From IMG/VR virus record IMGVR_UViG_3300020477_001008, positions 124,001-188,000 of that record: a DNA stretch of 64,000 bases. One strand, 5' to 3'. The first letter of the stretch is position 1; the number at the start of each line of letters is the position of its first letter. The notes below the pieces were generated by a model. It saw nothing but the letters and a program-made list of their open reading frames with translations. It searched no databases and had not been told where the DNA came from. A program made the translations under genes and the position numbers. Shown here one piece after another: positions 12,122 to 63,876 of this stretch.

Positions 12122-12165
12122 TACACATACAAATTAGCACATACAAAAATTGCGTAAATACACTT

Positions 12166-18164: not shown

Positions 18165-18341
18165 GTAGTGAATCGTGTTGGGGAATCAGTGTGAAATTCG
18201 CTGGCTCTACCAGGAACCGTAAAGTCGGAGTGCCAACCACTACAAGTCCGCTGTCGAATGAGGGCCTGGGAAAGTCTAGTTCTACAATGAAAAGTTAACA
18301 GTGGCGAGGCACGGCAACGTGTCATAAGGAAACTGTTAATG
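18165..18341 (+). ncRNA. cobalamin riboswitch (5' UTR) with RBS-sequestering expression platform
   Basis: Closing helix GTAGTG/CACTAC, GGGAA, T-loop GTGAAATTC, ACCGT, TGCCA; possible kissing pair CCAGG/CCTGG; TTAACAGT...ACTGTTAA stem encloses SD AAGGA and reaches the ATG; precedes a BtuB-like gene. Confidence 0.8.
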
Positions 18342-30817: not shown

Positions 30818-31816
30818 ATGAATTTACAATCTACAATTTTAGCATTTATTGGTGGTAAACATAAAAAAACACCATCAGGTTGGCACACTATTAATTGTCC
30901 AATGTGTGTAACTCAAGGGCATTCTGCAGACAAAAGAAGACGTGGTGGATTTAAATTCAGCGAAGTTTCAAGCTATCATTGTTTTAATTGTGGATATAAA
31001 GCATCATATACAGCCGGAAGATTAATAGGACGTAAAATGCGTGACTTATTAATTAATATTGGAGTACCAGAAGCAACAGTAAAAGAATTACAATTACTTG
31101 CAATGAAAGAAAAAGACGATAATGTAATTGTTAATAAACAAACCCACTATGCAAATGATTTTGAAGAAAAACAATTACCAAAAAATTCAGTATTATTAAG
31201 TGAAATTATTAAAGGTGCAAATCCACCTGCTAGTGCTTTATTTGTTTACAAATATTTAATGGATAGAGGTTTAGATTTTTATGATAAGTTTTATTGGAGT
31301 TCAGATCCATATATGAAAATTAATGAAAGAGTTATTATACCATTTTATGCTAATGGAAAATTAGTAGGATATACAGCTAGAATTATAAGAAATTATGATA
31401 ATGTACCAAAATATTATTCAGTAGTACAACCTGGATACATTTATAATTTTGATCACTTGTATAAAGATAGAAAATATATTATAATAACAGAAGGTGTGTT
31501 AGATGCACTTGCAATAGATTCAGTAAGTTCTTTAGGAAATAAGCTTACACAAGGACAAATAGATTTAATTAATAGCATTGGCAAAACTGTCATTGTTTGT
31601 CCAGACAGAGATAAGTCTGGAGGAAATTTAATTGATGTTGCTGTTGAAAACAACTGGCTAGTAAGTTTTCCACAATGGGAAAACAATATTAAAGATTGTG
31701 CAGAAGCAGTAAATAATTATGGGAGATTATATACAGTACAGTCTGTAATAAATGGTGCTATAGGTAATATAGCAAAAATTAAAGTTTTGAAAAGAATAGG
31801 AGCCACTAATGGTTAA
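30818..31816 (+). CDS. DNA primase (gp61/DnaG-like)
   Basis: Zn ribbon CPMC...HCFNCG, RVIIPF, TOPRIM ITEGVLDA and PDRD. Confidence 0.92.
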   Translation: MNLQSTILAFIGGKHKKTPSGWHTINCPMCVTQGHSADKRRRGGFKFSEVSSYHCFNCGYKASYTAGRLIGRKMRDLLINIGVPEATVKELQLLAMKEKDDNVIVNKQTHYANDFEEKQLPKNSVLLSEIIKGANPPASALFVYKYLMDRGLDFYDKFYWSSDPYMKINERVIIPFYANGKLVGYTARIIRNYDNVPKYYSVVQPGYIYNFDHLYKDRKYIIITEGVLDALAIDSVSSLGNKLTQGQIDLINSIGKTVIVCPDRDKSGGNLIDVAVENNWLVSFPQWENNIKDCAEAVNNYGRLYTVQSVINGAIGNIAKIKVLKRIGATNG

Positions 31817-32417
31817 AGAAAGTAAGAAAGATAAAGATAAAAACGCACAACCAAAGCAACCACAACAACCAATGCAACCAGGTATGTTAATGTGGGAAGC
31901 TGGAATAATGTATTTCAGTGATGGTTTTGATAGCCAAACAACGAAGCCAGTAATTCAAGCAATTATTGAAAAGAATTTAATGCCAGATTCACAAAGGCCA
32001 AAAGAATTAACGTTGGTGGTTAATTCACCAGGTGGACAAGTACATTCAGCATTTGCATTAATAGACACAATGAAAGGATCAGCAATTCCTGTAAAGACAG
32101 TAGGACTTGGTATGATAGCAAGTTGTGGATTGCTAACTTTTATGAGTGGTCATAAAGGACGTAGGGTTATTACACCAAACACGTCTATATTATCACACCA
32201 ATACAGTTGGGGATCTGGTGGTAAAGAACACGAACTATTTGCAAGAGTAAGAGAGTTTGAATTGAGTACAGCAAGAATGTTAGAACATTATAAAAAATGT
32301 ACAGGTTTAAGCGAAAAGAAAGTTAGAGATATTTTATTACCACCTGAAGACAGATGGTTAAGTGCCAAAGAAGCAGTCAAGTATGGTATTGCAGATAAAA
32401 TTGTATCAACATATTAG
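31809..32417 (+). CDS. clpP: ATP-dependent Clp protease proteolytic subunit ClpP-like
   Basis: VNSPGG, catalytic Ser (IASCG), His (LSHQ), Asp (EDRWLSAKEA.KYGIAD). Confidence 0.9.
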   Translation: MVKESKKDKDKNAQPKQPQQPMQPGMLMWEAGIMYFSDGFDSQTTKPVIQAIIEKNLMPDSQRPKELTLVVNSPGGQVHSAFALIDTMKGSAIPVKTVGLGMIASCGLLTFMSGHKGRRVITPNTSILSHQYSWGSGGKEHELFARVREFELSTARMLEHYKKCTGLSEKKVRDILLPPEDRWLSAKEAVKYGIADKIVSTY

Positions 32418-45792: not shown

Positions 45793-46998
45793 ATGGACAC
45801 TACTAATAATAAATTTTTTTGTTTTTATCCCTTTCGTGCGATTGATGTATTAGCAGATTCGTCTGTGGTACCTTGTTGTAGATTTGATGGAAGGCACGAC
45901 AAAAGCTTACAATATGTTAATGATAAAAATTCTATAACTGATGCGTTTAATTCTGATTACTTTAATAACTTAAGAAAAAAAATGTTAGCTGGTGAAAAAG
46001 TTAACGGTTGCTGGAAATGTTATAAAGAAGACGAAGCAGGTATTAAAAGTATGAGGCTTGGCTCTGATGAATTTATGGAGCAAACTACAGATGTAGGATT
46101 AGAATTTGTAGAATTAGAATCAGGTAGGTTTTGTAATTTAAAATGTAGATCGTGTAGCCCAGCAGTTTCAAGTGGATTTCATAATGAAGTTAAGTCTTCA
46201 AAATTTATGGCTGAACATTTTGGAATAGATTTAAACAATGAAATATTAGATCCTGCAAATCAATTAAACAAATCGTTTTTATATATTTCAAAAGAACAAG
46301 CACAGAAAATAAAATATATTAAAGTTACAGGTGGGGAACCTCTATTAAGTGAATATTTTTTAAAGTATATTCAAAATCTTAATGAATGGGGTTTGTCAAA
46401 AAATATCACTTTAGAAATCTATACTAATGCATCTTTTCTACCAAAACAAAAGCTCTCAGATGCGTTAAAACCTTTTAAAAAAATTTACTTGTTTATGAGT
46501 ATTGATGCTATAGGTAAAAAATCTGATTATTTAAGATCAGGTAGCAATTGGACTACAATGGAAAAAGTTGCAAAGCATTGGTATGATTTATCAACACAAA
46601 TGAATATGGAATTAAATGTTAGTACTACAATATCTATCTATAATGTTTTATATCTAAAAGAATTAATTGATTGGATACAACAAACTATTAAAATTTCTTG
46701 GCCAAGTATAAATTTTGTACATAATCCTTCGTATATGTGTGTATCAAGCTTTAATGTTGATATTAGAAATGAAATACTTAATACACTACAAAATACTTGG
46801 GACGAAAAAACATTAACAAGTAGGCAAGCCAGAGAATATAAAAAAATTATAAATTTTGTTGAAAATACTACAGAATCTATACCTCCTCACTATTTTTTTG
46901 AAACTACAGAAACAATAGATAAAATTAGAAATGAAGATTGGAAACAACTATTTCCGGAGTTATACAGCTTATTAAGTAGGTATAAAAACAGTATATAA
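45793..46998 (+). CDS. radical SAM protein with N-terminal twitch domain
   Basis: FCFYPF...PCCRF...GCWKCY; CNLKCRSC; VTGGEPLL; SIDAIG..YLR. Confidence 0.9.
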   Translation: MDTTNNKFFCFYPFRAIDVLADSSVVPCCRFDGRHDKSLQYVNDKNSITDAFNSDYFNNLRKKMLAGEKVNGCWKCYKEDEAGIKSMRLGSDEFMEQTTDVGLEFVELESGRFCNLKCRSCSPAVSSGFHNEVKSSKFMAEHFGIDLNNEILDPANQLNKSFLYISKEQAQKIKYIKVTGGEPLLSEYFLKYIQNLNEWGLSKNITLEIYTNASFLPKQKLSDALKPFKKIYLFMSIDAIGKKSDYLRSGSNWTTMEKVAKHWYDLSTQMNMELNVSTTISIYNVLYLKELIDWIQQTIKISWPSINFVHNPSYMCVSSFNVDIRNEILNTLQNTWDEKTLTSRQAREYKKIINFVENTTESIPPHYFFETTETIDKIRNEDWKQLFPELYSLLSRYKNSI

Positions 46999-47293: not shown

Positions 47294-48229
47294 ATGTCAA
47301 CAAGAAATATATGGGGTATAGGACAAGATACATTAAACTTTCCATCTGATACTATTCCAGTATCAAGTATGATGAGTGATACACAAAAGAATTTAATTAA
47401 TAGTGGATTACTTGATCAAGTTGATTTTACGGATCCTTGGGGAAGAAAATCTAAAGCATATCCTGGTTTTCAAAATCCGCATAATGATACTTTAACACAA
47501 ATTGCTAATGGCTGGAATTCAAGATTATCAGTTATGCCAGATGGTTGGAATGATAGCAACTATGCCAATAGAGCAGTTGTTGATGGAAATGCATTAGGTA
47601 ATGGTTTCAGTGCTAGAAAGTTAACTGATACAGAAATTAAAGATATTGGTTTTGTTGAAGGTATATTAAAAGACTTTACATTTTTAACTAATAGACAATC
47701 TGGTATGGACATTATGGAATATGCAAATCCTAATAGTATGTGGTCAGCATTAGGAAATACAGGTACCTATGGTGCTATGGTTGGTTTACCTACCACAGCA
47801 AGTTTTCCAACTGGTATTGTAGTTCCAGGTGTAACAAATTATCTTGGTGTTGCTAGAACTATAAATGAAATTGGACAAATTTTAAATAATGTACCAACAG
47901 GTTATACTTCTGGTCCTTGTAAATGGATAGAAGATATAATGAAAGCTGTAATGAAAGGTGGTTCAATATTAGCAGATATATTGAATAAAGTACTTGACGT
48001 ATTAGGCATCATTGGATTAGTAAACTCAATACTTGGTATGATTAAAATGTTAATGGATATGATACTTGAAGATCTAAGAACATTAGGATCAGCTATTGAA
48101 AGAATGAAGCAGGCGGCTTTATCTGGATTGTTAGAAGCATTAATGAAAGACCCTTGTATGAGATACTTAATTACGGCAGGGTTGGCAGTAGCTGGTACAG
48201 TAGCAATATTAAAAACAACCTCTCTATAA
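47294..48229 (+). CDS. hypothetical protein downstream of PAAR, hydrophobic helical C-terminus
   Basis: 311 aa, SD AGGAGG; long amphipathic/hydrophobic C-terminal helices. Confidence 0.75.
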   Translation: MSTRNIWGIGQDTLNFPSDTIPVSSMMSDTQKNLINSGLLDQVDFTDPWGRKSKAYPGFQNPHNDTLTQIANGWNSRLSVMPDGWNDSNYANRAVVDGNALGNGFSARKLTDTEIKDIGFVEGILKDFTFLTNRQSGMDIMEYANPNSMWSALGNTGTYGAMVGLPTTASFPTGIVVPGVTNYLGVARTINEIGQILNNVPTGYTSGPCKWIEDIMKAVMKGGSILADILNKVLDVLGIIGLVNSILGMIKMLMDMILEDLRTLGSAIERMKQAALSGLLEALMKDPCMRYLITAGLAVAGTVAILKTTSL

Positions 48230-48269
48230 TTTTTTCTTGTTTTTTCTAAAAATTCGTGTATAATTAACA

Positions 48270-48514
48270 GACAACGTTGAAGTTATCGTAATAGATTATA
48301 TGGACGTGGGGGCAGTACCCACCACCTCCACCATTAAGTTAAAAAGTTTTATGGGGGTGAACTAGGATCGACAGTAATTCAAAGGGTAATGGAGTTGTCC
48401 GGATGGAAGCTCGGTTAACGCGACAAACTTATAAATGCAGATGAAAATCTAGCACTTGCGGCCTAATTCGTTAGGCTAACGGGGTCCGGGGCACCTGGCA
48501 ACAGAACGCCCCAC
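48270..48514 (+). ncRNA. ssrA: circularly permuted (two-piece) tmRNA, alphaproteobacterial type
   Basis: Acceptor piece with T-arm GTGGG-GGCAGTA-CCCAC and CACCTCCA-CCA (ends 48333); 19-nt intervening segment; coding piece starts GGGGGTG at 48353 (G3:U70 pair) with GGATCGAC; tag gca gat gaa aat cta gca ctt gcg gcc taa = ADENLALAA (48437-48466); GGCAACAGAA; 5' end approximate. Confidence 0.93.
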
Positions 48515-48521
48515 TTGTATT

Positions 48522-48800
48522 ATGATAAAAAAAATTAAAGAATTTTGGGTAACAAGTTATAAATCAGATCCGTTTGCATTTATTAATGAAATGGCTTCAA
48601 CTATTCTAATAGTTATAGGATCAGCTATTTTAACGTGGACAGTATTAGATCCAAAGCCAGAAATTTTTATTCCTTTTTATTGGGCTGGTAGTATTGCTGG
48701 ATTTATAGGAGCATATCGTAGAACTCTGCCTTGGGTAATGGTATTGACATTTTGGTTTATAATGTTAAATAGTATTGCACTTTGGAGGTTGTTTTTATAA
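48522..48800 (+). CDS. small integral membrane protein
   Basis: Three hydrophobic segments in 92 aa. Confidence 0.7.
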   Translation: MIKKIKEFWVTSYKSDPFAFINEMASTILIVIGSAILTWTVLDPKPEIFIPFYWAGSIAGFIGAYRRTLPWVMVLTFWFIMLNSIALWRLFL

Positions 48801-49180
48801 TGGCAGAAGTACATAAACATTTGATAATCAGAGCTGAAACTAACAAAACACCAACTGATCCAGCTTGGGCTCATCAGTGGTTAACAAAGTTAGTAAAGAA
48901 AATAGGAATGAAAATTTGTCAAGGTCCTATTACTGCTTATGTTAATGTACCTGGCAATAAAGGATTAACAGGTTTAGTAGTTATTGAAACAAGCCATATT
49001 GCTTTGCATTGTTGGGATGAAGATGAGCCAGGATTGTTACAACTTGATGTTTACACTTGTGGACCGTTAGATGAACAAATTATTTTTAATGAACTAAAAC
49101 AATTTGATCCTGTTTGTGTAGAATACAAATACCTTGATAGAAAAAGAAATTTAAAAGAAATAGATGTCAATAAAAAATAA
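48800..49180 (+). CDS. speD: S-adenosylmethionine decarboxylase proenzyme (SpeD/SpeH-like)
   Basis: HLII.AE, GLTGLVVIETSHIALH.W, LDVYTCG; likely start MAEVH at 48800. Confidence 0.88.
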   Translation: MAEVHKHLIIRAETNKTPTDPAWAHQWLTKLVKKIGMKICQGPITAYVNVPGNKGLTGLVVIETSHIALHCWDEDEPGLLQLDVYTCGPLDEQIIFNELKQFDPVCVEYKYLDRKRNLKEIDVNKK

Positions 49181-49568
49181 AATAGACAATTGGGGAAAAC
49201 AATTATCAGTATTAGAAGGTATAGATAGATTACAATATCTAGTTGACCTAGCAGATAAAGAAACTTCATTGGCTAGTGATAAAAGAATAAATGCAAATAT
49301 GATACCTGGATGTGTATCTCAAATTTGGGTAGATGTTAGATTAGAAGATAATAAAGTTATTGCAGATTATGATTCAGATGCAATGATAACAAAAGGAATT
49401 ACAAGTGTAGTATGTGATTGCTTTACAGGTGCTACAAAAGAAGAAGTTAGCAATATAGTTGTAGAAGACTTTGAAAATTTAAATATTAAGCAATTATTAA
49501 CAGCACAACGACAAAATGGTTTAGGAAACCTGATCAATACAGTCATAAACAAGTCCCAGAAGTTATAA
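49164..49568 (+). CDS. sufE: cysteine desulfuration protein SufE
   Basis: DRLQYLVDL, catalytic IPGCVSQIW, DSDAMITKG and R.NGL. Confidence 0.9.
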   Translation: MSIKNKIDNWGKQLSVLEGIDRLQYLVDLADKETSLASDKRINANMIPGCVSQIWVDVRLEDNKVIADYDSDAMITKGITSVVCDCFTGATKEEVSNIVVEDFENLNIKQLLTAQRQNGLGNLINTVINKSQKL

Positions 49569-49607: not shown

Positions 49608-50069
49608 GTGTCAAGCAGTAAGAGAGGCATAACCGCAATCTTCGTAGCATTAATGTTACTCATTGCAACTATACCTTTGAATCTTCATTCCAAGGCTAGT
49701 GCAAGTTCTGACAATTTTATCATAGATTTTAGAATTAATGTTTCGTATGGATTAGGTTGGCGAGTAGATACTCCAGATCCAATGACAATTATACCAGGTA
49801 AAGAATACAAAGTTAATTTAATGGCAGTAAATGATATGGATTCTACTAAAATTGCTGAAATTATGTATGGGTATTTGCCCCCTGAGTTTGCAAGATATTT
49901 TTTATTAGTAGAATGTTTTTGTTATGATACTATTAAATTAAAAGCAAAAAGAATAATTGAATTGCCAGTTGTTTTTATTATTGATCCAGCTATATTAAAA
50001 GATAGAAAATTTAGGAAAGATAAAAATATAACAATAAGATTCAATTTCTACCCACAGATAAAACGTTGA
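49608..50069 (+). CDS. cytochrome c oxidase copper chaperone CtaG/Cox11-like
   Basis: N-terminal TM anchor, Cu-binding ECFCY motif, LPVVFIIDP; GTG start. Confidence 0.72.
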   Translation: MSSSKRGITAIFVALMLLIATIPLNLHSKASASSDNFIIDFRINVSYGLGWRVDTPDPMTIIPGKEYKVNLMAVNDMDSTKIAEIMYGYLPPEFARYFLLVECFCYDTIKLKAKRIIELPVVFIIDPAILKDRKFRKDKNITIRFNFYPQIKR

Positions 50070-50645: not shown

Positions 50646-51005
50646 ATGACCTATTATGTTAATCAAGCCTGTGTAATGTGTAAACACACCGATTGCGTGG
50701 AAGTTTGTCCAGTAGATTGTTTTTACGAAGGTGAAAATTTTTTAGCAATTAATCCAGATGAATGTATAGACTGTGGAGTTTGTGAACCAGAATGCCCAGT
50801 TGATGCAATTAAACCTGACACACACGATGAACCAGACAAAGACAAATGGATAGAAATTAATAAAAAGTATTCAAGTGGACCAAACAGATGGCCAGTATTA
50901 ACAAAAATGATTGAAGCATTAGAAACAGCAGAAGAATATGCAACTAAAACAGATAAAATAAATTTATTATCAGAAAAACCTGGACCAGGAGATGAAGGAC
51001 GATGA
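50646..51005 (+). CDS. fdxA: 7Fe ferredoxin FdxA ([3Fe-4S]/[4Fe-4S])
   Basis: MTYYV...[43 protein letters not shown]. Confidence 0.95.
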
Positions 51006-53136: not shown

Positions 53137-53562
53137 ATGTACGAATATAGATGTAAAATATTAAAAATCATTGACGGGGATACTGTTGATGTTGATATAG
53201 ATTTAGGTTTTGGAGTATGGATGCACAAGGAACGTGTTAGATTGTTTGGCATTGATACTCCTGAGTCTAGGACTAGAGATAAAGAAGAAAAGAAATACGG
53301 TTTACTATCCAAAAAATTTATACAAGAAAGATATCCAGTAGGATCAAATGCAATATTAATAACGCATAAAGACGCAACTGGAAAGTTTGGACGTATATTG
53401 GGTGAGCTAAAATATAATAATACTACAATTAATAAGAAAATGATACTTGAAGGTTATGCAGTTGCTTATCACGGACAATCAAAAGAAGATGTTGAAGCAG
53501 AACATTTAAAAAATAGAAAAAAGTTGGATAAAAAAATAAGCAAATTTACTAAAGTAAAATGA
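53137..53562 (+). CDS. thermonuclease (SNase-like)
   Basis: IIDGDTVDV.IDLGF, RVRLFGIDTPESRT, GKFGRILG and GYAV.Y.G. Confidence 0.92.
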   Translation: MYEYRCKILKIIDGDTVDVDIDLGFGVWMHKERVRLFGIDTPESRTRDKEEKKYGLLSKKFIQERYPVGSNAILITHKDATGKFGRILGELKYNNTTINKKMILEGYAVAYHGQSKEDVEAEHLKNRKKLDKKISKFTKVK

Positions 53563-53795
53563 GATTAGATCTTCACGGATTTACAGTACACGATGCTTGG
53601 AAAAAATTTAGTGTATGGATTCAAGACGCACAAACAAAGGAAAATGTTAAATCTGTTACAATAGTAACAGGCCAAGGAGAAATCCATAAAGAACTTCCTC
53701 GATGGTGTGATAATATGAATTTTATTAGACAAATACAACCACACTTTCATAATGGTGCTTACCAAATTTATTTTTACAAAAACAGACGTGAATAG
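53559..53795 (+). CDS. stand-alone Smr-domain protein (putative mRNA endonuclease)
   Basis: LDLHG (DxH) and IVTGQG (GxG) Smr signature motifs; 78 aa. Confidence 0.82.
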   Translation: MRLDLHGFTVHDAWKKFSVWIQDAQTKENVKSVTIVTGQGEIHKELPRWCDNMNFIRQIQPHFHNGAYQIYFYKNRRE

Positions 53796-53796
53796 A

Positions 53797-53825
53797 TTGA
53801 CAAAAATTGGATTGTATAGTATATT
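53797..53825 (+). promoter_or_regulatory. sigma70 promoter of queD
   Basis: TTGACA(53797-802)-N17-TATATT(53820-25). Confidence 0.75.
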
Positions 53826-53831
53826 AAACAA

Positions 53832-53882
53832 TGAGGACTTAACGTCAACCCTCTTTAAAAATTCTGCCGTCAATATAAGGAG
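53832..53882 (+). ncRNA. candidate preQ1-I riboswitch
   Basis: GAGG...ACCCTC stem followed by an A-rich TTTAAAAA tail at the predicted +1, upstream of queD; loop CTTA can pair with TAAG of the SD region. Confidence 0.5.
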
Positions 53883-53887
53883 AAAAT

Positions 53888-54352
53888 ATGGGTAAACATT
53901 TTAGTACAAAACATTACGGACATAATATTGGGTTGAGTGCAGTTTTTAGACAACCAAACGCAGACCATTCACATTGTCATTTTTTACACGGATATAGTTT
54001 AGCATTTACATTTACATTTGGTTGTGATGAGTTAGATAATAAAAATTGGGCAGTTGATTTTGGAGGACTAAAACCTTTAAAAAAATGGCTTGAAGACTCA
54101 TTTGATCATAAACTTTGCTTGGATAAAAACGATCCACATCTAGAAAAATTTAAAGAATTAGAAGCAATGGATCTTGCACAGATTAGAATTTTTGATGGTG
54201 TTGGAGCAGAAAAATTTGCCGAACACGCCTTTAATTTTGCAGATAATTTAATTAAAGAAGCAACAAATAATCGTTGTTATGTAGTAAAAGTAGAATGTGC
54301 AGAACACGGAGCCAATTCGGCAATATATCAAATAACTGAAAAAAACCTATAA
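53888..54352 (+). CDS. queD: 6-carboxy-5,6,7,8-tetrahydropterin synthase QueD
   Basis: FRQ..AD.SHC.FLHGY, W.VDFGGLK, FDHK, GAEKFAE and ECAEHGANSAIY. Confidence 0.9.
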   Translation: MGKHFSTKHYGHNIGLSAVFRQPNADHSHCHFLHGYSLAFTFTFGCDELDNKNWAVDFGGLKPLKKWLEDSFDHKLCLDKNDPHLEKFKELEAMDLAQIRIFDGVGAEKFAEHAFNFADNLIKEATNNRCYVVKVECAEHGANSAIYQITEKNL

Positions 54353-56058: not shown

Positions 56059-56264
56059 AAACCAGGAAAGAGAGAATAAAAAAAATTGACATCAACGATG
56101 AAATTAGTGTACAATTAAAAGAAGTAAAAAAAACTATTGATATGGAAGGCATTAATCAAAGAACTCAAAAAACACTGGCACTCAATCACGGAGCAAAAGG
56201 TGAGACAGTAATATCCAAGGCTGACAAAGAATGGTTAGATCAGAAATCAGATAATAATAAATGA
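56046..56264 (+). other. -1 frame extension of the 54361 gene (72 open codons) or small ORF 56142..56264
   Basis: Frame open from 56046 to TGA 56262-64, overlapping the clpX ATG. Confidence 0.45.
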
Positions 56265-57553
56265 GCGATAAAGAGATTAAAATGAAATGCTCGTTCTGTG
56301 AAAAGACTAGAGCCGAATCACATAAATTAATAGCAGGACCTAAAGAAACATTTATTTGCGATGAATGTGTAAAACTTTGCCACGATATTTTAAAAGAAGG
56401 AACAATTGAAAACGAAACAAAAGAGTTTGCTATTCCTGATCCAAAAAAATTACACGGATATTTAAATGAACACGTAATTGGTCAAGATAGAGCAAAGAAA
56501 ATTGTTAGTGTAGCAGTTTATAACCATTATAAAAGAATTGTTAATAATTTAATTAAAGAAGATGGGCAAGACGAAATTGAAAAATCTAATGTTATGATGT
56601 TAGGACCATCAGGTGTTGGAAAAACACTTTTAGCTAAAAAGGTTGCTGAATACGTAAATGTACCATTTGCTATTGCTGATGCAACAACAATAACAGAATC
56701 AGGTTATGTAGGTGATGACGTAGAGAATATTGTAACAAGATTATTGCAACAAGCAGACTTTAATGTTGAAAAAGCTGAACGTGGAATTATATACATTGAT
56801 GAAATAGATAAAAAAGCAAAAAAAGGTGAGAACGTATCAATTACTAGAGATGTATCTGGTGAAGGTGTACAACAAGCTTTATTAAAAATTATTGAAGGAA
56901 CAACTGTTAGAGTTCCGCCACAAGGTGGAAGAAAACATCCTGGTGCAGAAATGATTGAAGTTGATACATCAAATATATTGTTTATAGTTGGTGGAGCATT
57001 TGTTGGTATAGATAAAGTTATTAATAAAAGGGCTAATAAGTCAGCAGGTATTGGATTTAATCAACGAGTAGAAACTGTTGATACAGGATTTGATGAATGC
57101 GAACCAGATGATTTAATTAAGTATGGATTAATACCTGAACTTGTTGGAAGGTTACCAGTTATAGTAGGTTGTCATAATTTAGATAAAAAAGATTTAAAAG
57201 CAATTATGCTTGATGTAAAAAATTCATTGATTAAACAATCTCAACGTTTATTTAAAATGGAAAATGTAAATTTAATTATAACTGAAGATGCAGTAGATTA
57301 TGTAGTAGATGAAGCACACGAAAAGAAATTAGGTGCTAGAGGATTAAAATCTGTGTTAGAAAAAGGTTTATTAGAAATACAATATGACTTACCAGAATAC
57401 AGAGATGGTGGAGTTAGTGAAATTACAGTTACAGAAAAAACGCTCAAAGGAGAAAAACCGATGCTCACTTATGAGTTTGATGCTAAAGATATAAAAGCTA
57501 AAGAAACAAAAAAAGGGAAAAAGGAAGATAACGGTACAACAGGAAAAGAATGA
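56261..57553 (+). CDS. clpX: ATP-dependent Clp protease ATP-binding subunit ClpX
   Basis: Zn domain CSFC...ICDEC; Walker A GPSGVGKT; pore loop GYVG; IDEIDK; RDVSGEGVQ; RKH loop; IGF loop (AGIGF). Confidence 0.97.
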
Positions 57554-58104
57554 AACAAAGATATAGTAATTACGAGTATCAAAAAAAGAAAGCATTAATT
57601 AACGAGAATATTAGAAGTAAAGAAGTTCGTTTAATATTAGAATCATCACAAGAAATAGTAACTACACAAGAAGCATTAAGATTATCTAGAGAGCAAGATT
57701 TAGATCTAGTTTGTGTTAGCACAAAATCAAATCCACCTATATGTAAAATTATGGATTATGGGAAACATCTATATGAACAAAAAAAGAAACAAAAAATTGC
57801 TGATAAAAAACAAAGAGAAGCTATTGTGGATACAAAAGAAATCCAGTTTAGACCAGCAACTGGAATTGGAGATCTTAAAGTAAAAGCTAAAAAGGTACAA
57901 GAGTTTATAGATGATGGAGATAAGGTAAAATTAGTAATGAAATTGCGTGGCAGGGAAAATGCTATGAAGGATTTTGCTATGGAACAATTCAAAAAATTTG
58001 TTGATTTAATTGAGAATTATGACTACGATTATAGGCCAAATATACAGGGAAATAAAATACTTGCAATTTTAAAGAAAGGTGTTATAATAAAGAACAATGA
58101 GTGA
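57550..58104 (+). CDS. infC: translation initiation factor IF3
   Basis: INENIR..EVRLI, DLDLV.VS....[28 protein letters not shown]....RGRE. Confidence 0.95.
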
Positions 58105-58453
58105 TAAACCAAGGAAAAAATACGACATCAAAAATTTCTCTAATTTTGGGAAATTTGAGCAAAAGCGAGATCGAAGACCAAGACGTGAGCCAGATCCACC
58201 TGGTTTAGCAGTTACAGTTCACGGCGACGATGTAATGAAAGCTTATAGAAGGCTTAAAAAGAAACTAATGAAAGATAACCTTATGGATACAATAAGGGAT
58301 AAAAGATATTACAAAAAGCCAAGTGAAATTAGACAAGAAAAATTAAAAGTGCAAAGAAGGAATATGCAAAAAGCTCAAAGAGATAGAGCTATGCAATATG
58401 GTATAAGATATAAAAACTATGATCCTAGCACAGCCAAAACACGTGGCTATTAA
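58097..58453 (+). CDS. rpsU: 30S ribosomal protein bS21 with N- and C-terminal extensions
   Basis: VTVHGDDVMKAYRRLKKKL...RYYKKPSE.R core; own promoter TTGCAA-N16-TGn-TATAAT-N8-ATG. Confidence 0.85.
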   Translation: MSDKPRKKYDIKNFSNFGKFEQKRDRRPRREPDPPGLAVTVHGDDVMKAYRRLKKKLMKDNLMDTIRDKRYYKKPSEIRQEKLKVQRRNMQKAQRDRAMQYGIRYKNYDPSTAKTRGY

Positions 58454-58934: not shown

Positions 58935-59010
58935 GGGCGGTTAGCTCAGTTGGTAGAGCATCTCGTTTACACCGAGGGGGTCAAAGGTTCGAGTCCTTTA
59001 CTGCCCACCA
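58935..59010 (+). tRNA. tRNA-Val(TAC)
   Basis: GGGCGGT...ACTGCCC-A-CCA; anticodon loop TTTACAC; TTCGAGT. Confidence 0.97.
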
Positions 59011-59014
59011 TTAC

Positions 59015-59090
59015 GGAGTATTAGTGTAGCGGTTAACACGTCGCCCTGTCACGGCGAAGACCACGGGTTCGAATCCCGTATACTCCGCCA
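59015..59090 (+). tRNA. tRNA-Asp(GTC)
   Basis: GGAGTAT...ATACTCC-G-CCA; anticodon arm TCGCC-CTGTCAC-GGCGA. Confidence 0.97.
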
Positions 59091-59108: not shown

Positions 59109-60314
59109 ATGCACAATATTCGAAAACAATTTCCCATATTTGATAAAACATTACCTAACGGTAAAAAATTAGTATATTTAGATAGTGCTAATTCTTCACA
59201 AAAACCGAAAAGGGTATTAGATAGATTATATGATTTTTATGCACAAGAATATAGTAGTGTTGGGAGAAGTATACACCAGTTAAGTACAGGTGCAAGTAAA
59301 TGTTTAAATGATAGTAGAGAAGCAGTTGCAAAATTTTTAAATGCTGGTTCTGTAGATGAAATTGTTTTTACTAAAAGTGCCACAGAAGCTATTAATACGA
59401 TTGCAGAAAGTTTTGGCAGAACTCAACGTGATCATTATGAAATAATTTGTTCTGAATTAGAACATAATTCAAATTATCTTCCTTGGCATTTGCAAAGAGC
59501 TCATAAAAATGCAACAATTAAATTTATTCCTTTAAAAGATGATTATACATTAGATGTAGATAAGCTAGAAAGTTTAATTACTAAAAAAACTAAAATGATA
59601 GCAATAACTCATTTATCAAATGTTACTGGAGAAGTAATTAATGTTAAAAAAATATGTGAGATAGCACACAGTAAAGGAATAGCAGTTTTTGTAGATGGTA
59701 CACAAGGTGCACCACATATGAAAGTTGATGTACAAGATATTGATTGTGATTTTTATTGTATTAGTGGTCATAAAATGTACGGACCTTCAGGCGTTGGGGC
59801 TTTGTACGCCAAAGAAAAATGGTTAGATGAATTATCGCCTTTTCAAGGTGGTGGTGGAACGGTACTTGATGCAACGCAAAGTGTTATTCAATATGCAGAT
59901 GGACCAAAAAAATGGGAAGCTGGAACACACCCAGTTGCTGAAATTGTAGCATTAAAAGAAGCAATTGATTTTTATTATGATGTTGGATTTGATAATATGT
60001 TAAATCACGAAAAACAATTAGTTGAGTATTTGTATGAAAAATTAGCATCTGATAATGATATTGAGTTACTATGTGGTAATAAGCCTAATGCTGTTTTATC
60101 ATTTAATATTAAAGGAATACATCACGAAGATATGTCAATGTTTTTAGATGAATATGGTATTGCTACAAGACCAGGTCAACATTGTGCTATGTTATTCCAT
60201 AAAAGGTACAGTTTAACTGGTTCTGTTAGAGTATCATTAGGTGTATATAATACCAAAGAAGAAATGGACTTTTTCTTACAGTCTTTGGGTGAAATTAAGA
60301 AGAGATTATCCTAA
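59109..60314 (+). CDS. sufS: SufS-type cysteine desulfurase
   Basis: VYLDSA.SSQKP, ELEHNSN, PLP lysine SGHKMYGP, catalytic RPGQHCA, R.SLG.YNT.EE. Confidence 0.93.
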   Translation: MHNIRKQFPIFDKTLPNGKKLVYLDSANSSQKPKRVLDRLYDFYAQEYSSVGRSIHQLSTGASKCLNDSREAVAKFLNAGSVDEIVFTKSATEAINTIAESFGRTQRDHYEIICSELEHNSNYLPWHLQRAHKNATIKFIPLKDDYTLDVDKLESLITKKTKMIAITHLSNVTGEVINVKKICEIAHSKGIAVFVDGTQGAPHMKVDVQDIDCDFYCISGHKMYGPSGVGALYAKEKWLDELSPFQGGGGTVLDATQSVIQYADGPKKWEAGTHPVAEIVALKEAIDFYYDVGFDNMLNHEKQLVEYLYEKLASDNDIELLCGNKPNAVLSFNIKGIHHEDMSMFLDEYGIATRPGQHCAMLFHKRYSLTGSVRVSLGVYNTKEEMDFFLQSLGEIKKRLS

Positions 60315-60319
60315 TCCTA

Positions 60320-60367
60320 TTGACTTCCTGATAAGTATTTTATATAATACTGATGTACAATTAAATA
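60320..60367 (+). promoter_or_regulatory. tandem sigma70 and late promoters for rplL-sufB
   Basis: TTGACT(60320-25)-N17-TATAAT(60343-48); TAAATA 60362-67; SD AAGGA. Confidence 0.7.
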
Positions 60368-60385
60368 TAATTAATAAGGAAAACT

Positions 60386-60856
60386 ATGTCAGAAGATGAA
60401 GTAAAAAAAGCTGAAGAAACAAAGGCAGAAGAAAAGCCAGTAGAACCAAAAGCTGAAGAAACATCTAAAACTATTACAAGAAATTTAGATGCTATTGTTG
60501 AAGAACTTGGACAATTAACAGTTATGGAAGCGGCCGATCTTGCTAAAAAATTAGCTAAAGCTTGGGATATTGATTTAGATAATATGGCGGCCGGTGTTGC
60601 ACCAGCAGGTGGTGGCGCCGCGGGAGCTCCAGCAGACGCAGATGCTCCTGTAACAGTTATATTAAAAGATTTTAAAGAAGGTACTAAAATTAATGTCTTA
60701 AAAGCAATTAAGGCAATTAAAGGTTTAGGACTAATGGAATCTAAACAATTTGTAGAAGCATTACCTAAAGAAGTTGATTCAGAAATACCAAGAGATAAAG
60801 CAGAAGAAATTAAAAAACAATTGGAAGAAGTTGGCGGTAACGTTGAAATAAAATAA
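60386..60856 (+). CDS. rplL: 50S ribosomal protein bL12 (L7/L12) with N-terminal extension
   Basis: [16 protein letters not shown], Ala/Gly hinge, [34 protein letters not shown]. Confidence 0.95.
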
Positions 60857-62280
60857 TGTTAGATGAGCATAAGGTAGGAAAAGATTATAAAGAAGGCTTT
60901 ACTACGGACATTGAAGCCTATACACTACCCCCTGGTCTAAATGAAGACGTTATTAAAAAGATATCAAGTTTTAAAAAAGAACCACAATGGCTTTTAGACT
61001 GGAGACTAAAAGCTTATAAGGTTTGGCTGAATATGAAACAGCCTGAGTGGGCAAAGTTAGATATTAAGCCAATTGACTATCAAGCAATATCATATTATTC
61101 AACACCTAATCCTAAATTAAAATCTTTAGATGAATTAGATCCTAAAATTTTAGAAACATATAATAAGTTAGGTATTCCATTACACGAACAAAAAGCATTA
61201 GCAGGTGTGGCCGTTGATGCAGTATTTGATTCTGTATCTGTAGCTACAACGTACAAAGCAGATTTAGAAAAACAAGGTATACTTTTTTGTAGCTTTAGTG
61301 AAGCAGTAGAAAAATATCCAGAAATAGTTAAAAAATATTTAGGTAGTGTAGTACCACAAGGTGATAATTTTTTTGCTTGTTTAAATTCAGCTGTATTTAC
61401 AGATGGTTCATTTGCTTATATTCCTAAAGGAGTTAGATGTCCTATGGAACTATCAACTTATTTTAGAATAAATGCGGCCAACACAGGACAATTTGAAAGA
61501 ACATTAATTATATGTGAAGATGATGCATACGTATCTTATCTAGAAGGATGTACAGCACCAATGCGTGATGAAAATCAATTACACGCCGCGGTAGTTGAAT
61601 TAGTAGCAAAAGAAAATGCAGAGATAAAATATTCAACAATACAAAATTGGTATCCAGGAGATGAAGATGGAAAAGGTGGTGTATATAATTTTGTAACTAA
61701 ACGTGGTAAATGTCAAGGACGTAAAAGTAAAATATCTTGGACACAATTAGAAACAGGTTCAGCATTAACTTGGAAGTATCCTTCTTGTGTATTAATGGGA
61801 GATTATTCAGTAGGAGAGTTTTATTCAGTAGCAGTATCAACAGGTAAACAACAAGCTGATACAGGAACTAAAATGATACATTTAGGAAAACATACAAAAT
61901 CAACAGTTATATCAAAAGGTATTTCAGCAAAACAAGGAAAGCAAACTTATAGAGGATTAGTATCAATGGGTGGTAATGCTAAAAAATCACAAAACTATAC
62001 TCAATGTGATTCGTTGCTTCTTGGAGATAAGTGTTCAGCACTTACTATACCTTATATTAAAAGTAAAACAAAATCTTCTAAATGCGAACACGAAGCGTCA
62101 ACATCAAAAGTATCTGATGAACAATTATTTTATTTAAGACAACGTGGACTTAAAGAAGAAGATGCTGTGAACTTAATTGTAAATGGTTTTGTAAAAGAAG
62201 TAACTAAACAGTTACCAATGGAGTTTGCAGTTGAGGCCAATAAACTTTTATCAGTAACATTAGAAGGATCAGTAGGATAA
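60856..62280 (+). CDS. sufB: Fe-S cluster assembly scaffold SufB
   Basis: [55 protein letters not shown] and CEHEASTSK. Confidence 0.97.
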
Positions 62281-62505: not shown

Positions 62506-63876
62506 ATGAAAGTAGACAAATATATTAAAGTAATTGATGAGTCAATTGAAGCACAGAAAAAATGGAGAACTGTTCCTGCACCTGTACGTGGTGAGGCAAT
62601 TAGAAAGTTTGGAAATAAATTAAGAGAAAATTTAGTATCAGTTGGAAAAGGTGTTACTAGAGAAAGTAAAAAAATATTAGTAGAAGGTATAGGTGAAGTA
62701 CAAGAAGTAATTGATATGTGTGATTTTGCAGTTGGGCTATCAAGACAACTATATGGAAAAACAATGCCTTCTGAAAGACAGGATCATAGACTACAAGAAA
62801 TTTGGAATCCTATTGGAGTAGTTGGTGTAATTACAGCTTTTAATTTTCCTGTTGCACCTTGGGGTTGGAATTTTTGTTTAGCAATTGTATGTGGTAATAG
62901 TGTTATTTGGAAACCATCTCCAAAAACAATGGAAGTATCTCATTTATGTAAAAAGATTTGGGACGAAACTGTAGAAACTGATGATGAACGTAAACTTTTA
63001 GAAATTATAGATGGTGATGTAACTGAATCACGTTGGATGGCACAAGACAAAAGGATTAATTTATTAAGTGCTACAGGTTCTTGTGAAATGGGTAAAGCAT
63101 TAGCACCATTAGTATCAGAAAGAATGGGTAAAGGATTATATGAATTAGGTGGAAATAATGCAATGGTTGTGTCTAAACACGCAAATTTAGATTTGGCAGT
63201 AAGAGCTATTGTTTTTAGTGCAGTAGGAACTTGTGGACAAAGATGTACAACATTAAGAAGATTAATAGTACACGAGTCTAAATATGATGAATTATTGGAA
63301 AGATTAACAAAATCATATGCAAGTTTACCTATAGGAAATCCAATAAAAAGAGAAAATTTAGTAGGTCCATTAATAAATCAACAAGCATTAGATAAAATGC
63401 AAGGTGTATTAAAAGAATGTAAAGAAAAAGGATATACAATACACGGCGGAGAACCATTAGCAGATCTTGGAGAAGGCTTTGTTAAACCTGCTATTGTTGA
63501 AGTACCAGAACAATGCGATATTGTAAGAACAGAAACATTTGCTCCTATTTTGTATACTATGAAATATAATGAGCTAGATGAAGCAATAGCAATACAAAAT
63601 GATGTAGATCAAGGATTAAGTTCTTGTATATTTACAGACAATATTCAAGAAGCTGAAACATTTATTTCTGCACAAGGTTCAGATTGTGGAATAGTAAATA
63701 TTAACATAGGACCATCAGGTGCAGAGATTGGTGGAGCATTTGGTGGAGAAAAAGATACAGGCGGCGGAAGAGAATCAGGCTCTGATGCTTGGAAACAGTA
63801 TATGAAAAGAACTACTGTTACAACAAACTATGGTAAAGACCTACCATTAGCACAAGGAATAACATTCGATGCCTAA
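62506..63876 (+). CDS. aldehyde dehydrogenase, ALDH7 / piperideine-6-carboxylate dehydrogenase family
   Basis: GVITAFNFPVAP, ELGGNN (catalytic Glu), GTCGQRCTT (catalytic Cys), ETFAPILY, GAEIGGAFGGEK.TGGGRESGSD.WK.Y. Confidence 0.92.
   Translation: MKVDKYIKVIDESIEAQKKWRTVPAPVRGEAIRKFGNKLRENLVSVGKGVTRESKKILVEGIGEVQEVIDMCDFAVGLSRQLYGKTMPSERQDHRLQEIWNPIGVVGVITAFNFPVAPWGWNFCLAIVCGNSVIWKPSPKTMEVSHLCKKIWDETVETDDERKLLEIIDGDVTESRWMAQDKRINLLSATGSCEMGKALAPLVSERMGKGLYELGGNNAMVVSKHANLDLAVRAIVFSAVGTCGQRCTTLRRLIVHESKYDELLERLTKSYASLPIGNPIKRENLVGPLINQQALDKMQGVLKECKEKGYTIHGGEPLADLGEGFVKPAIVEVPEQCDIVRTETFAPILYTMKYNELDEAIAIQNDVDQGLSSCIFTDNIQEAETFISAQGSDCGIVNINIGPSGAEIGGAFGGEKDTGGGRESGSDAWKQYMKRTTVTTNYGKDLPLAQGITFDA

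What the first reader, a model, noticed from the sequence alone, without database searches (positions are those of the whole stretch)
48270..48514. Permuted two-piece tmRNA identifies an alphaproteobacterial host
Seen: the acceptor piece (T-loop GGCAGUA, CCA encoded) precedes the coding piece, with a G3:U70 alanine determinant and a short 9-codon tag. Established: this permutation with a GGCRGUA T-loop is characteristic of Alphaproteobacteria and their relatives. Together with low GC, FdxA and CtaG, it points to a streamlined alphaproteobacterial host; SAR11-like is plausible but not shown.
Basis: partly seen in the sequence, partly recalled or inferred. Interest (0 to 1): 0.6.

Follow-up and report, generated by a model that had tools for sequence, protein, structure and literature searches.

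The report
Jumbo marine phage carries two-piece tmRNA
A large marine phage carries its own working-looking copy of the bacterial ribosome-rescue RNA (a two-piece, alphaproteobacterial-type tmRNA); this kind of gene is already known in phages and does not by itself reveal which bacterium the phage infects.

Summary
Window 48271-48515 (+) is a complete permuted two-piece tmRNA: T-loop GGCAGUA, encoded CCA, G3:U70, 9-codon tag ADENLALAA. Rfam scores alpha_tmRNA 152.8 bits, against beta 69.6 and cyano 25.3, both below cut-off. The window lies in a 242.6-kb IMG/VR virus record (about 55% complete). The virus is a jumbo myophage related by TerL and sheath to PA5oct, Phosso and Atu_ph07.

The gene sits at a fixed place downstream of the RNR operon in over 50 marine viral contigs. 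It shows strong covariation (23 compensatory pairs, G3:U70 invariant) and a 30-nt tag cassette that is almost invariant. It is therefore a selected phage gene, not an attP scrap or contamination. No SmpB was found, but the phage encodes a bona fide ClpX, ClpP-like proteins, ClpS, IF3 and bS21.

The host inference is only partly supported:
- Melnitz (OM43 host) has the same T-loop.
- Close relatives of this phage carry canonical T-loops.
- No cellular two-piece tmRNA has this tag.
- CtaG and BtuB have no close cellular homologues by word search.

SAR11 is unsupported. Phage two-piece tmRNAs are already published, so this is a new member of a known kind.

The parts
48237..48264 (+). Sigma-70-type promoter: TTGTTT (48237-48242), 16-nt spacer, TATAAT (48259-48264). 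The predicted transcription start is about 48271.
   Evidence: Read. The TATAAT box is conserved, and most relatives have a perfect TTGACA-N17-TATAAT. The window's weak -35 was not flagged by the consensus scan.
48271..48333 (+). Acceptor piece of the two-piece tmRNA. It holds the 5' strands of helix 2, the T arm (48306-48322, T-loop GGCAGUA 48311-48317), the acceptor 3' strand CACCUCC (48323-48329), discriminator A and the encoded CCA (48330-48333).
   Evidence: In 32 distinct relatives the T stem and acceptor stem are 100% paired, each with 3 compensatory pairs.
48334..48352 (+). Intervening segment (19 nt), expected to be removed during processing.
   Evidence: Its length varies from 16 to about 193 nt among relatives with no sequence conservation. 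It is about 380 nt in phage Phosso.
48353..48515 (+). Coding piece. It holds the acceptor 5' strand GGGGGUG (48353-48359, G3 pairs with U70), the 3' strands of helix 2, a hairpin at 48399-48414, the tag ORF, the stop-codon hairpin and the 3' pseudoknot.
48437..48466 (+). Tag reading frame GCA GAU GAA AAU CUA GCA CUU GCG GCC UAA, encoding ADENLALAA plus stop.
   Evidence: The exact 30-mer occurs in 53 IMG/VR contigs, against 58 for the fully degenerate pattern.
48460..48477 (+). Hairpin GGCCUAA-UUCG-UUAGGCU that holds the stop codon.
   Evidence: helix 7, 99% paired.
48480..48512 (+). 3' H-type pseudoknot. S1 is CGGG 48480-48483 with CCUG 48494-48497. S2 is GGGGC 48488-48492 with GCCCC 48508-48512. 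It encloses the conserved ACCUGGCAACAGAA motif.
   Evidence: S1 is invariant, and S2 has 4 of 5 pairs with changes on both sides (GGGGC/GCCCC versus GCAAC/GUUGC).
56261..57553 (+). Phage-encoded ClpX, the inferred downstream partner that recognises tags ending in ALAA.
   Evidence: NCBIfam equivalogs NF003745 at 550.9 bits (cut-off 359) and TIGR00382 at 529.4 (cut-off 370.75). Zn finger, Walker A, GYVG, RKH and IGF motifs are present. The functional link to the tag is inferred.
31809..32417 (+). ClpP-like peptidase, the inferred partner of ClpX. A second copy lies outside the window at G000:73956-74462.
   Evidence: Pfam CLP_protease 1.6e-31. It scores below the NCBIfam ClpP cut-offs. Copies located.
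57550..58453 (+). Translation initiation factor IF3 (57550-58104) and ribosomal protein bS21 (58097-58453), directly downstream of ClpX.
   Evidence: TIGR00168 at 152.3 (cut-off 60) and TIGR00030 at 44.7 (cut-off 28.95). The same clpX-IF3 adjacency is reported for Sinorhizobium jumbo phage AP-J-162 (PMC11242549).

Best explanation
This is a functional ssrA gene owned by a marine jumbo myophage.

PROPOSED MECHANISM. Every step below is inferred; what is shown directly is listed after it.
1. The gene is transcribed from its own sigma-70-type promoter as one precursor.
2. Host tRNA-processing enzymes cut the precursor: RNase P at G48353, and 3' trimming to the encoded CCA at 48333. This gives an acceptor piece of about 63 nt and a coding piece of about 163 nt, which stay paired through the acceptor stem and helix 2.
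3. Host AlaRS charges it, using the G3:U70 determinant. Host SmpB and EF-Tu deliver it to ribosomes stalled on broken mRNAs, which should be plentiful during infection.
4. Translation resumes at GCA 48437 and appends (A)ADENLALAA.
5. The ALAA end sends the product to ClpXP, which the phage also encodes. This frees ribosomes and recycles amino acids for phage protein synthesis.

SHOWN DIRECTLY: the gene anatomy, its conservation at a fixed locus, the covariation, and the presence of clpX, clpP-like genes, clpS, IF3 and bS21.

The alpha-type architecture records where the gene came from. It does not necessarily record the present host.
For: Anatomy and family scores.

The gene sits at the same locus (RNR-alpha, RNR-beta..., PAAR, DUF7217, tmRNA, small ORF, SpeD, SufE) in every relative that extends far enough.

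Covariation on 32 distinct sequences: 94.6% of cells are paired against 83.2% in shuffles (0 of 500 shuffles reach it) and 27-50% when the partner is slid; 23 pairs change on both sides; G3:U70 is invariant in 32 of 32.

The promoter is conserved.

The tag cassette is invariant in 53 of 54 lineage members, although RNR-alpha falls to 66% identity.

In the sample drawn through the upstream gene, independent of the tag, all 10 contigs that reach the locus carry the tag ADENLALAA; the 30-nt cassette is identical in the nine of them aligned.

No SmpB is found in G000 or in the three complete tmRNA-bearing phage genomes Phosso, Melnitz and HTVC008M, so host SmpB must be used.

ClpX passes its equivalog cut-offs and has the GYVG, RKH and IGF motifs. 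ClpP-like genes (two copies), ClpS and HSP20 are present in G000.

ClpX and ClpA recognise the C-terminal ALAA of the tag (PMC3985003).

Precedents: Melnitz and pelagimyophages (PMC9004378), huge phages (PMC7162821) and AP-J-162 (PMC11242549).
Against: G000 is only about 55% complete, so a phage SmpB or SspB could lie in the missing part. Some huge phages do carry SmpB.

No intrinsic terminator follows the gene, so how the 3' end forms is unknown.

The ClpP-like proteins score below the ClpP equivalog cut-offs.

The link between the tag and the phage ClpXP rests on co-occurrence and motifs only.

Compatibility of an alpha-type tRNA-like domain with the unknown host's SmpB is assumed.
Confidence: 0.68

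Rival explanations
1. Host marker reading: the gene was recently taken from the phage's alphaproteobacterial, SAR11-like host, and so identifies that host.
For: Alpha-type subtyping is robust. Phosso, which infects an alphaproteobacterium, has an alpha-type tmRNA. AP-J-162 likewise has a tmRNA. The clpX-IF3 arrangement is shared with rhizobial jumbo phages. RNR-beta's best cultured match is a Pelagibacter phage, but only by about 1%. GC content is 32%.
Against: Melnitz (OM43 host) has the same T-loop, while HTVC008M (SAR11 host) has UGCAAUA. The T-arm swaps to canonical forms within this lineage. No cellular two-piece tmRNA has this tag. The gene is old in the phage lineage and not a recent capture. 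BtuB and CtaG show no close cellular donor. The sheath and TerL are closest to Pseudomonas phages. I could not compare directly with labelled alphaproteobacterial ssrA genes.
Confidence: 0.45
2. attP or integration remnant: the sequence is a piece of host ssrA carried because the phage, or an ancestor, integrates into the tmRNA gene.
For: tmRNA genes are common integration sites, and prophages can carry ssrA fragments (PMC9004378; PMC11915505).
Against: The gene is complete, with both pieces, its own promoter and an intact tag ORF. It shows compensatory evolution. No tyrosine integrase is found in 242 kb. The phage is a jumbo myophage related to lytic phages.
Confidence: 0.03
3. Decoy or regulator: the RNA competes with host tmRNA for SmpB, or senses stalled ribosomes, in order to block or re-time host quality control rather than to rescue ribosomes for the phage.
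For: A CDS-less tmRNA-like RNA of mycobacteriophage DS6A inhibits host tmRNA (PMC11915505). tmRNA has been proposed as a sensor of host physiological state (PMC7162821). No phage SmpB was found.
Against: A decoy would not need an intact resume codon, ORF, stop hairpin, G3:U70 and CCA. All of these are invariant or covarying. The same peptide tag is kept with different codons in other phage tmRNAs, which points to selection on the peptide.
Confidence: 0.12
4. Assembly chimera or cellular contamination within the viral contig.
For: None found.
Against: The same synteny is seen in over 50 independent contigs from Tara, BATS and JGI marine metagenomes. Flanking genes are phage genes.
Confidence: 0.01

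Closest known systems
ssrA of Methylophilales phage Melnitz and of pelagimyophages such as HTVC008M (Buchholz et al. 2022, PMC9004378)
   Same: These are marine myophages carrying a complete permuted alpha-type tmRNA with its own promoter and no phage SmpB. Melnitz has the identical GGCAGUA T-loop, and HTVC008M also has a short tag, ANFNEYALAA.
   Different: Those are T4-like Kyanoviridae of about 141-147 kb; this is a jumbo phage of at least 242-311 kb with PA5oct/Atu_ph07-like TerL and sheath. The genomic locus differs: here it lies downstream of the RNR operon. No glnA riboswitch was detected at Rfam gathering thresholds. The tag differs. blastn finds no similarity to any INPHARED phage at E<=1e-5.
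tmRNA of the rhizobial jumbo phages Phosso (PV764938.1) and AP-J-162 (PMC11242549)
   Same: These are jumbo myophages related by TerL (52.7%) and ClpX (50.4%). Phosso has an alpha-type permuted tmRNA. AP-J-162 has clpX adjacent to IF-3 plus S21 and Hsp20.
   Different: Phosso's tmRNA is in a different gene context, has a GGCGGUA T-loop, an intervening segment of about 380 nt and a typical alpha tag, ANDNVSTKVALAA. Those are soil phages with 47% GC. Atu_ph07 has no tmRNA.
Cellular alphaproteobacterial two-piece tmRNA (Rfam RF01849; shown to function in Caulobacter)
   Same: It shares the gene permutation, T-loop, G3:U70, encoded CCA, helix 2, the tag ORF between structured elements, and the conserved 3' ACCUGGCAACAGAA motif.
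   Different: This one is encoded by a virus and has no adjacent or co-encoded SmpB. The tag is ADENLALAA rather than the ANDN...A(L/V)AA of the Rfam consensus. The RNA is compact, at 245 nt between the model ends.
One-piece tmRNAs of Planctomycetota, Lachnospiraceae, Cloacimonadota and Spirochaetota
   Same: They have the identical complete tag peptide ADENLALAA; 55 of the 76 ARAGORN calls in the hits give it.
   Different: They have the standard, non-permuted gene form, are cellular and belong to unrelated phyla, so the tag identity is convergence or shared optimisation, not homology of the whole gene.

Membership tests
Alphaproteobacterial-type permuted (two-piece) tmRNA, Rfam RF01849 | Score at or above the curated gathering threshold, and higher than the other permuted subtypes | tested here: met
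   152.8 bits against a cut-off of 50. Beta_tmRNA scores 69.6 (cut-off 84) and cyano_tmRNA 25.3 (cut-off 70).
Alphaproteobacterial-type permuted (two-piece) tmRNA, Rfam RF01849 | Circularly permuted gene order: the acceptor piece ending in CCA lies upstream of the coding piece | tested here: met
   CCA at 48331-48333, coding piece from 48353.
Alphaproteobacterial-type permuted (two-piece) tmRNA, Rfam RF01849 | T-loop GGCRGUA in place of the canonical UUCRANY | tested here: met
   GGCAGUA at 48311-48317, matching the RF01849 consensus GGCgGUA. However, syntenic relatives carry UUCGAAA, UUCAACU or a 6-nt loop.
Alphaproteobacterial-type permuted (two-piece) tmRNA, Rfam RF01849 | G3:U70 alanine identity pair in a 7-bp acceptor stem | tested here: met
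   GGGGGUG pairs with CACCUCC. The pair is invariant in 32 of 32 relatives while neighbouring pairs covary.
Alphaproteobacterial-type permuted (two-piece) tmRNA, Rfam RF01849 | Tag ORF starting at an Ala resume codon and ending in a hydrophobic A(L/V)AA | tested here: met
   ADENLALAA. The N-terminal part differs from the ANDN of the family consensus.
Alphaproteobacterial-type permuted (two-piece) tmRNA, Rfam RF01849 | Residence in an alphaproteobacterial (or derived organellar) genome | tested here: not met
   The gene lies in a virus record among phage structural and replication genes.
Alphaproteobacterial-type permuted (two-piece) tmRNA, Rfam RF01849 | Processing into two RNAs, and SmpB-dependent tagging | not testable with these tools
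   No RNA data could be obtained. No SmpB gene is present in the phage.
Phage-encoded tmRNA of marine myophages (Melnitz / pelagimyophage type) | A complete, promoter-bearing permuted ssrA in a lytic marine myophage that lacks SmpB | tested here: met
Phage-encoded tmRNA of marine myophages (Melnitz / pelagimyophage type) | Glutamine (glnA) riboswitch in the 3' domain, as reported for Melnitz | tested here: not met
   No glnA RNA hit in the window at Rfam gathering thresholds.
Phage-encoded tmRNA of marine myophages (Melnitz / pelagimyophage type) | T4-like Kyanoviridae backbone of about 140-150 kb | tested here: not met
   The record is 242.6 kb at 55% completeness, and an identical CtaG lies on a 311-kb contig. 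TerL and sheath are nearest to PA5oct, Phosso and Atu_ph07.

The most novel reading that the evidence does not exclude
In this group of marine phages the tmRNA gene is a modular cassette that recombines. The T-arm flips between the 'alphaproteobacterial' GGCRGUA form and canonical T-loops, possibly tracking shifts between host classes. The intervening segment expands and contracts. A minimal tag, (A)ADENLALAA, is held fixed even at the codon level, because it is matched to the phage's own ClpX/ClpP and tRNA set. Together these would make a largely self-contained viral system for ribosome rescue and proteolysis.
Probability: 0.2. Interest if true: 0.6.

Novelty: new member of a known kind. Interest (0 to 1): 0.4.

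Why it matters
For annotation, it shows that a clade-typical tmRNA in a viral contig reports the ancestry of the gene and is not a safe host label. That matters for pipelines that predict hosts from tRNA or tmRNA similarity.

Biologically, it adds a widespread marine jumbo-phage lineage (Tara, BATS and JGI samples) to the phages that carry ribosome-rescue RNA. It also places that RNA alongside phage-encoded ClpX, ClpP-like proteins, ClpS, IF3, bS21 and tRNAs. This suggests a testable model in which the phage both rescues stalled ribosomes and disposes of the tagged products with its own protease.

The swapping of T-arms between otherwise near-identical tmRNAs offers natural variants for asking what the unusual alpha-type T-loop is for.

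Tried and rejected
1. Direct comparison with host ssrA genes was not possible. The genome search refuses 'relatives' for a virus record. I spent the single genome-contig scan on the degenerate tag pattern, which returned only non-alphaproteobacterial genomes. Genomes reached through loci show no taxonomy. So no tmRNA tree with labelled Alphaproteobacteria could be built.

3. blastn of the tmRNA against 50,697 phage records found nothing at E<=1e-5.

4. A generic alpha T-arm pattern scan of IMG/VR gave 120 loci, none of them close (at most 87% identity over at most 60 nt).

5. AMG-based host inference failed. The BtuB homologues at about 66% identity lie on phage-like contigs. CtaG has only phage-lineage relatives by word search. 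The records behind L274, L275 and L277 are not held for whole-record searches.

6. I dropped the argument that SAR11 lacks TonB-dependent receptors. PMC4771312 lists a TBDT trait within its SAR11 set.

7. Papers on marine jumbo phages and on GORG-Tropics single-cell genomes gave nothing on this lineage.

8. The primary two-piece tmRNA papers PMC16621 and PMC516066 are not held.

9. ARAGORN misses Phosso's tmRNA and the reduced forms such as L222 and L233. Rfam RF04321 finds L222, but nothing reaches threshold for L233.

10. The attP reading, the chimera reading, and the beta- and cyano-type readings were all rejected.

Full report
OBSERVATION

ARAGORN finds one tmRNA in the window. It is permuted, lies at 48238-48557 (+), and has the tag ADENLALAA*. 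Rfam places alpha_tmRNA (RF01849) at 48221-48515 with 152.8 bits (E 4.5e-42, cut-off 50), and the general tmRNA_permuted model (RF04321) at 48271-48466 with 125.6 bits.

- T stem GUGGG/CCCAC with T-loop GGCAGUA (48311-48317).
- Acceptor 3' strand CACCUCC, followed by the discriminator A and an encoded CCA (to 48333).
- A 19-nt intervening segment.
- Acceptor 5' strand GGGGGUG from 48353, so that G3 pairs with U70.
- A nine-codon frame from GCA 48437 to UAA 48464-48466.

The tmRNA database authors recommend scoring the three clade-specific models to subtype permuted tmRNAs (PMC11915505). That gives alpha 152.8, beta 69.6 (below its cut-off of 84) and cyano 25.3 (below 70).

WHERE IT SITS

The window is bases 124001-188000 of a 242,646-bp IMG/VR virus record that CheckV rates 55% complete. 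GC content is 32%. Nearly all genes are on one strand.

The window encodes:
- A 1011-aa tail sheath, a tail tube protein, a T4-type large terminase, a UvsW helicase and a DnaB-like helicase.
- UvsX/RecA and a gp32-like protein.
- Class Ia RNR alpha and beta.
- Many auxiliary genes.

The nearest cultured phages by TerL are the Pseudomonas PA5oct group (53.6%), Sinorhizobium phage Phosso (52.7%, 469 kb), Agrobacterium phage Atu_ph07 (50.4%, 490 kb), a 349-kb Vibrio phage, and Rak2-like coliphages. The sheath is also closest to PA5oct, at 40.5%. A CtaG identical over its 138 residues (90% of the window's ORF as I defined it) lies on a 311-kb contig.

So this is a jumbo myophage, not a T4-like pelagimyophage. 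Contigs of the same lineage come from Tara Oceans, BATS and other marine metagenomes.

IS THE GENE REAL AND SELECTED?

A search with the protein just upstream (DUF7217, 47294-48229) found 13 IMG/VR contigs. All ten that extend far enough have a permuted tmRNA at the same place with the same tag. That includes four contigs whose upstream protein is only 49% identical.

The exact 30-nt tag cassette occurs in 53 IMG/VR contigs. All of them are syntenic with the window: RNR-alpha (66-95% aa), RNR-beta, a small ORF, sometimes a radical SAM gene, a PAAR protein, DUF7217, then the tmRNA, then a 92-aa ORF, SpeD and SufE (PAAR).

I aligned 32 distinct members and tested a structure taken from the Rfam consensus plus a 3' pseudoknot that I read from the sequences. 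The results were:
- 94.6% of cells form standard pairs, against 83.2% in column shuffles (0 of 500 reach it) and 27-50% when partners are slid by 1-3 columns.
- 23 of 46 pairs show changes on both sides.
- The T stem and the acceptor stem are paired in every sequence, each with three compensatory positions.
- G3:U70 is invariant.

Two caveats apply. The shuffle control does not correct for relatedness. And the structure was derived partly from one of these sequences. The slid controls and the count of double changes are the stronger evidence.

A sigma-70-type promoter precedes the gene. It reads TTGTTT-N16-TATAAT in the window and TTGACA-N17-TATAAT in most relatives. No intrinsic terminator follows it.

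The intervening segment ranges from 16 to about 193 nt without conservation, as expected for a spacer that is removed. No tyrosine integrase is present in the 242 kb.

The gene is therefore a long-standing, selected part of the phage. It is not an attP scrap or an assembly artefact.

THE TAG

With the alanine carried by the RNA, the appended peptide would be AADENLALAA.

A fully degenerate back-translation pattern finds only 58 viral contigs, against 53 for the exact 30-mer. The five extra hits are:
- One lineage member with a single synonymous change.
- Two contigs of a different permuted phage tmRNA, with the same peptide but six synonymous differences.
- One one-piece phage tmRNA on a 189-kb contig, with four synonymous differences.
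- One ADENFALAA variant.

The same pattern scanned over one genome for each of 185,579 bacterial and archaeal species gave 80 hits. All were outside the Alphaproteobacteria: Planctomycetota, Lachnospiraceae, Cloacimonadota, Spirochaetota and others. ARAGORN one-piece tmRNAs among them, 55 with exactly this tag. The only 'permuted' call there is a spurious second hit with a different tag.

So ADENLALAA is a recurrent minimal tag that several unrelated lineages have reached. No cellular two-piece tmRNA in that collection carries it.

Sampling the wider phage group through RNR-beta, independent of the tag, shows that about 28 of 35 contigs with enough downstream sequence carry a permuted tmRNA there. 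Their tags are very diverse: ADAELVAA, ANDNFASEDYALAA, ANDNYAPEMALAA, and forms of about 30 residues. The ADENLALAA phages are one sub-lineage of a larger tmRNA-bearing group.

THE T-LOOP IS NOT STABLE IN THIS LINEAGE

Among the 53 syntenic contigs most have GGCAGUA. Some have GGCGGUA or GGCAGUG. Five have canonical UUCGAAA, two have UUCAACU, and three have a 6-nt loop.

L268 (GGCAGUA) and L272 (UUCAACU) are 88% identical over 250 columns outside the T arm, but only 47% identical within it. That looks like replacement of the arm.

Rfam still ranks alpha_tmRNA best wherever a clan family scores. The most reduced forms reach only RF04321, or no family at all.

PARTNERS

No SmpB gene is found in the record, or in the complete genomes of Phosso, Melnitz and HTVC008M, which all carry tmRNAs. 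These RNAs must use host SmpB. No SspB is found.

The phage does encode:
- A ClpX that passes both NCBIfam equivalog cut-offs and has the zinc finger, Walker A, GYVG, RKH and IGF motifs.
- Two ClpP-like proteins, which score below the ClpP equivalog cut-offs, plus ClpS and HSP20.
- IF3 and ribosomal protein bS21 immediately after clpX.
- Nine tRNAs, all with encoded CCA.

ClpX and ClpA recognise the C-terminal ALAA of tmRNA tags (PMC3985003). The same clpX-IF3 adjacency, together with S21, Hsp20, several Clp genes and one tmRNA, is reported for the 471.5-kb Sinorhizobium phage AP-J-162 (PMC11242549). Phosso has an unannotated alpha-type tmRNA with a GGCGGUA T-loop, an intervening segment of about 380 nt and the tag ANDNVSTKVALAA. 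It lies in another gene context.

MECHANISM

The best-supported reading is a working phage ssrA:
1. It is transcribed from its own promoter and cut by host tRNA-processing enzymes into two base-paired pieces. RNase P and tRNase Z are the enzymes proposed for cellular two-piece tmRNAs.
2. It is charged by host AlaRS and delivered by host SmpB and EF-Tu to ribosomes stalled on damaged mRNAs during infection.
3. It adds a short ALAA-ended tag, which ClpXP degrades. The phage supplies its own ClpXP.

The anatomy, conservation, covariation and gene inventory are shown directly. Processing, charging, tagging and the coupling to the phage protease are inferred.

HOST

The alpha-type architecture is solid, but it does not identify the host:
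- Melnitz infects OM43 yet carries an alpha-type ssrA with the same T-loop. The SAR11 phage HTVC008M has a different loop, UGCAAUA (PMC9004378).
- The T arm changes within this lineage.
- The tag has no alphaproteobacterial counterpart.
- BtuB and CtaG have no close cellular homologues by word search, so no recent donor is visible.
- Cultured relatives infect both Alpha- and Gammaproteobacteria.
- RNR-beta is marginally closest to Pelagibacter phages (65.9%), against 64.8% for a cyanophage, which does not discriminate.

I could not build a tmRNA tree with labelled alphaproteobacterial genomes. My estimate that an alphaproteobacterial host is about as likely as not is therefore a judgement, not a measurement. 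I see no evidence for SAR11 specifically. A phage genome of several hundred kilobases argues against such a small cell; that is inference from my own knowledge.

COMPARISON AND NOVELTY

The following are already published:
- Phage-borne two-piece alpha-type tmRNAs in marine myophages. ARAGORN called 53 of the 133 unique tmRNA structures found in 18,146 phage genomes two-piece, and 50 of those came from marine or aquatic phages.
- tmRNAs, IF3 and S21 in huge phages.
- A tmRNA in a rhizobial jumbo phage.

This is a new member of that kind. The less expected points are the T-arm swaps, the codon-level fixation of a minimal tag that also occurs in one-piece tmRNAs of other phyla, and the co-occurrence with a phage ClpX/ClpP set. 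These are leads rather than established findings.

Noticed in passing
window 18165-20686: An AdoCbl-II (cobalamin) riboswitch at 18165-18243 (85.1 bits) precedes a DUF6580 membrane protein (18339-18848) and a TonB-dependent, BtuB-like vitamin B12 receptor (18818-20686). This looks like a phage-encoded, riboswitch-controlled B12 uptake operon. The DUF6580-BtuB pair is conserved on related phage-like contigs (L275-L277). It implies a host with a TonB system and a use for B12.
   Followed up: partly
window 56261-58453, plus tRNA-Val and tRNA-Asp at 58935-59090: A ClpX-IF3-bS21 gene cluster followed by two tRNAs. ClpX, IF3 and bS21 all pass NCBIfam equivalog cut-offs. The same clpX-IF3 adjacency is reported in Sinorhizobium jumbo phage AP-J-162.
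   Followed up: partly
window 49164-49568, 50646-51005, 59109-62280; also 10802-13290 and 45793-46998: An Fe-S cluster toolkit: SufE, FdxA-type ferredoxin, SufS-like cysteine desulfurase, SufB/D, and three radical SAM/SPASM proteins. The phage appears to invest heavily in iron-sulfur enzyme assembly.
   Followed up: no
L268:3391-3657 versus L256:1424-1680 and L272:1358-1614: These tmRNAs are 85-88% identical outside the T arm, but the arm itself is swapped: GGCAGUA with stem AUCGG/CCGAU against UUCAACU with stem GUGGG/CCCAC. The 17-nt arm looks replaced as a unit.
   Followed up: partly
L222:4914-5131, L233:4782-4997, L230:1748-1987: Reduced forms of the lineage's tmRNA, with only 58-80 nt between the CCA and the resume codon and a shortened helix 2. 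ARAGORN misses them. Rfam finds L222 only with RF04321 (52.8 bits) and finds nothing for L233.
   Followed up: partly
L220 (PV764938.1:349553-350242, minus strand): Sinorhizobium phage Phosso has an alpha-type two-piece tmRNA (RF01849 108 bits, tag ANDNVSTKVALAA, intervening segment of about 380 nt). It is not annotated in the GenBank record, and ARAGORN misses it.
   Followed up: yes
G000 tRNAs (window 50269, 58935, 59015, and outside the window); L130-L133: The phage's nine tRNAs include Ala(tgc), Asp(gtc), Glu(ttc) and Asn(gtt), which cover four of the five amino acids in the tag. Relatives also carry tRNA-Leu(tag), which reads the tag's CUA codon. This is a post hoc observation. It may be chance, or it may relate to the codon-level fixation of the tag.
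   Followed up: no
L274 (NCBI GCA_902565185.1, contig CACFDS010000001.1, 324,190 bp): A contig deposited within a 'genome' assembly carries a gene set typical of this phage group: ClpX, bS21, HSP20, ClpS, ClpP, BtuB, ThyX, FdxA and radical SAM. It is probably a jumbo phage. If the assembly is a single-cell genome, its other contigs could name a host.
   Followed up: no
L288-L366 (downstream of RNR-beta): A permuted tmRNA within 6 kb downstream of RNR-beta is present in about 28 of 35 related marine viral contigs. The tags range from 8 residues (ADAELVAA) to about 30 (for example ANDNALNNVTFVDFG...NEDFALAA).
   Followed up: partly
window 48522-48800, 48800-49180, 49608-50069, 53137-54352, 62506-63876: The 92-aa ORF directly after the tmRNA is conserved and has no family match; it looks hydrophobic when read by eye. 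Other auxiliary genes here are SpeD (S-adenosylmethionine decarboxylase), CtaG/Cox11, a staphylococcal-type nuclease, a PTPS/QueD-like enzyme and an aldehyde dehydrogenase.
   Followed up: no
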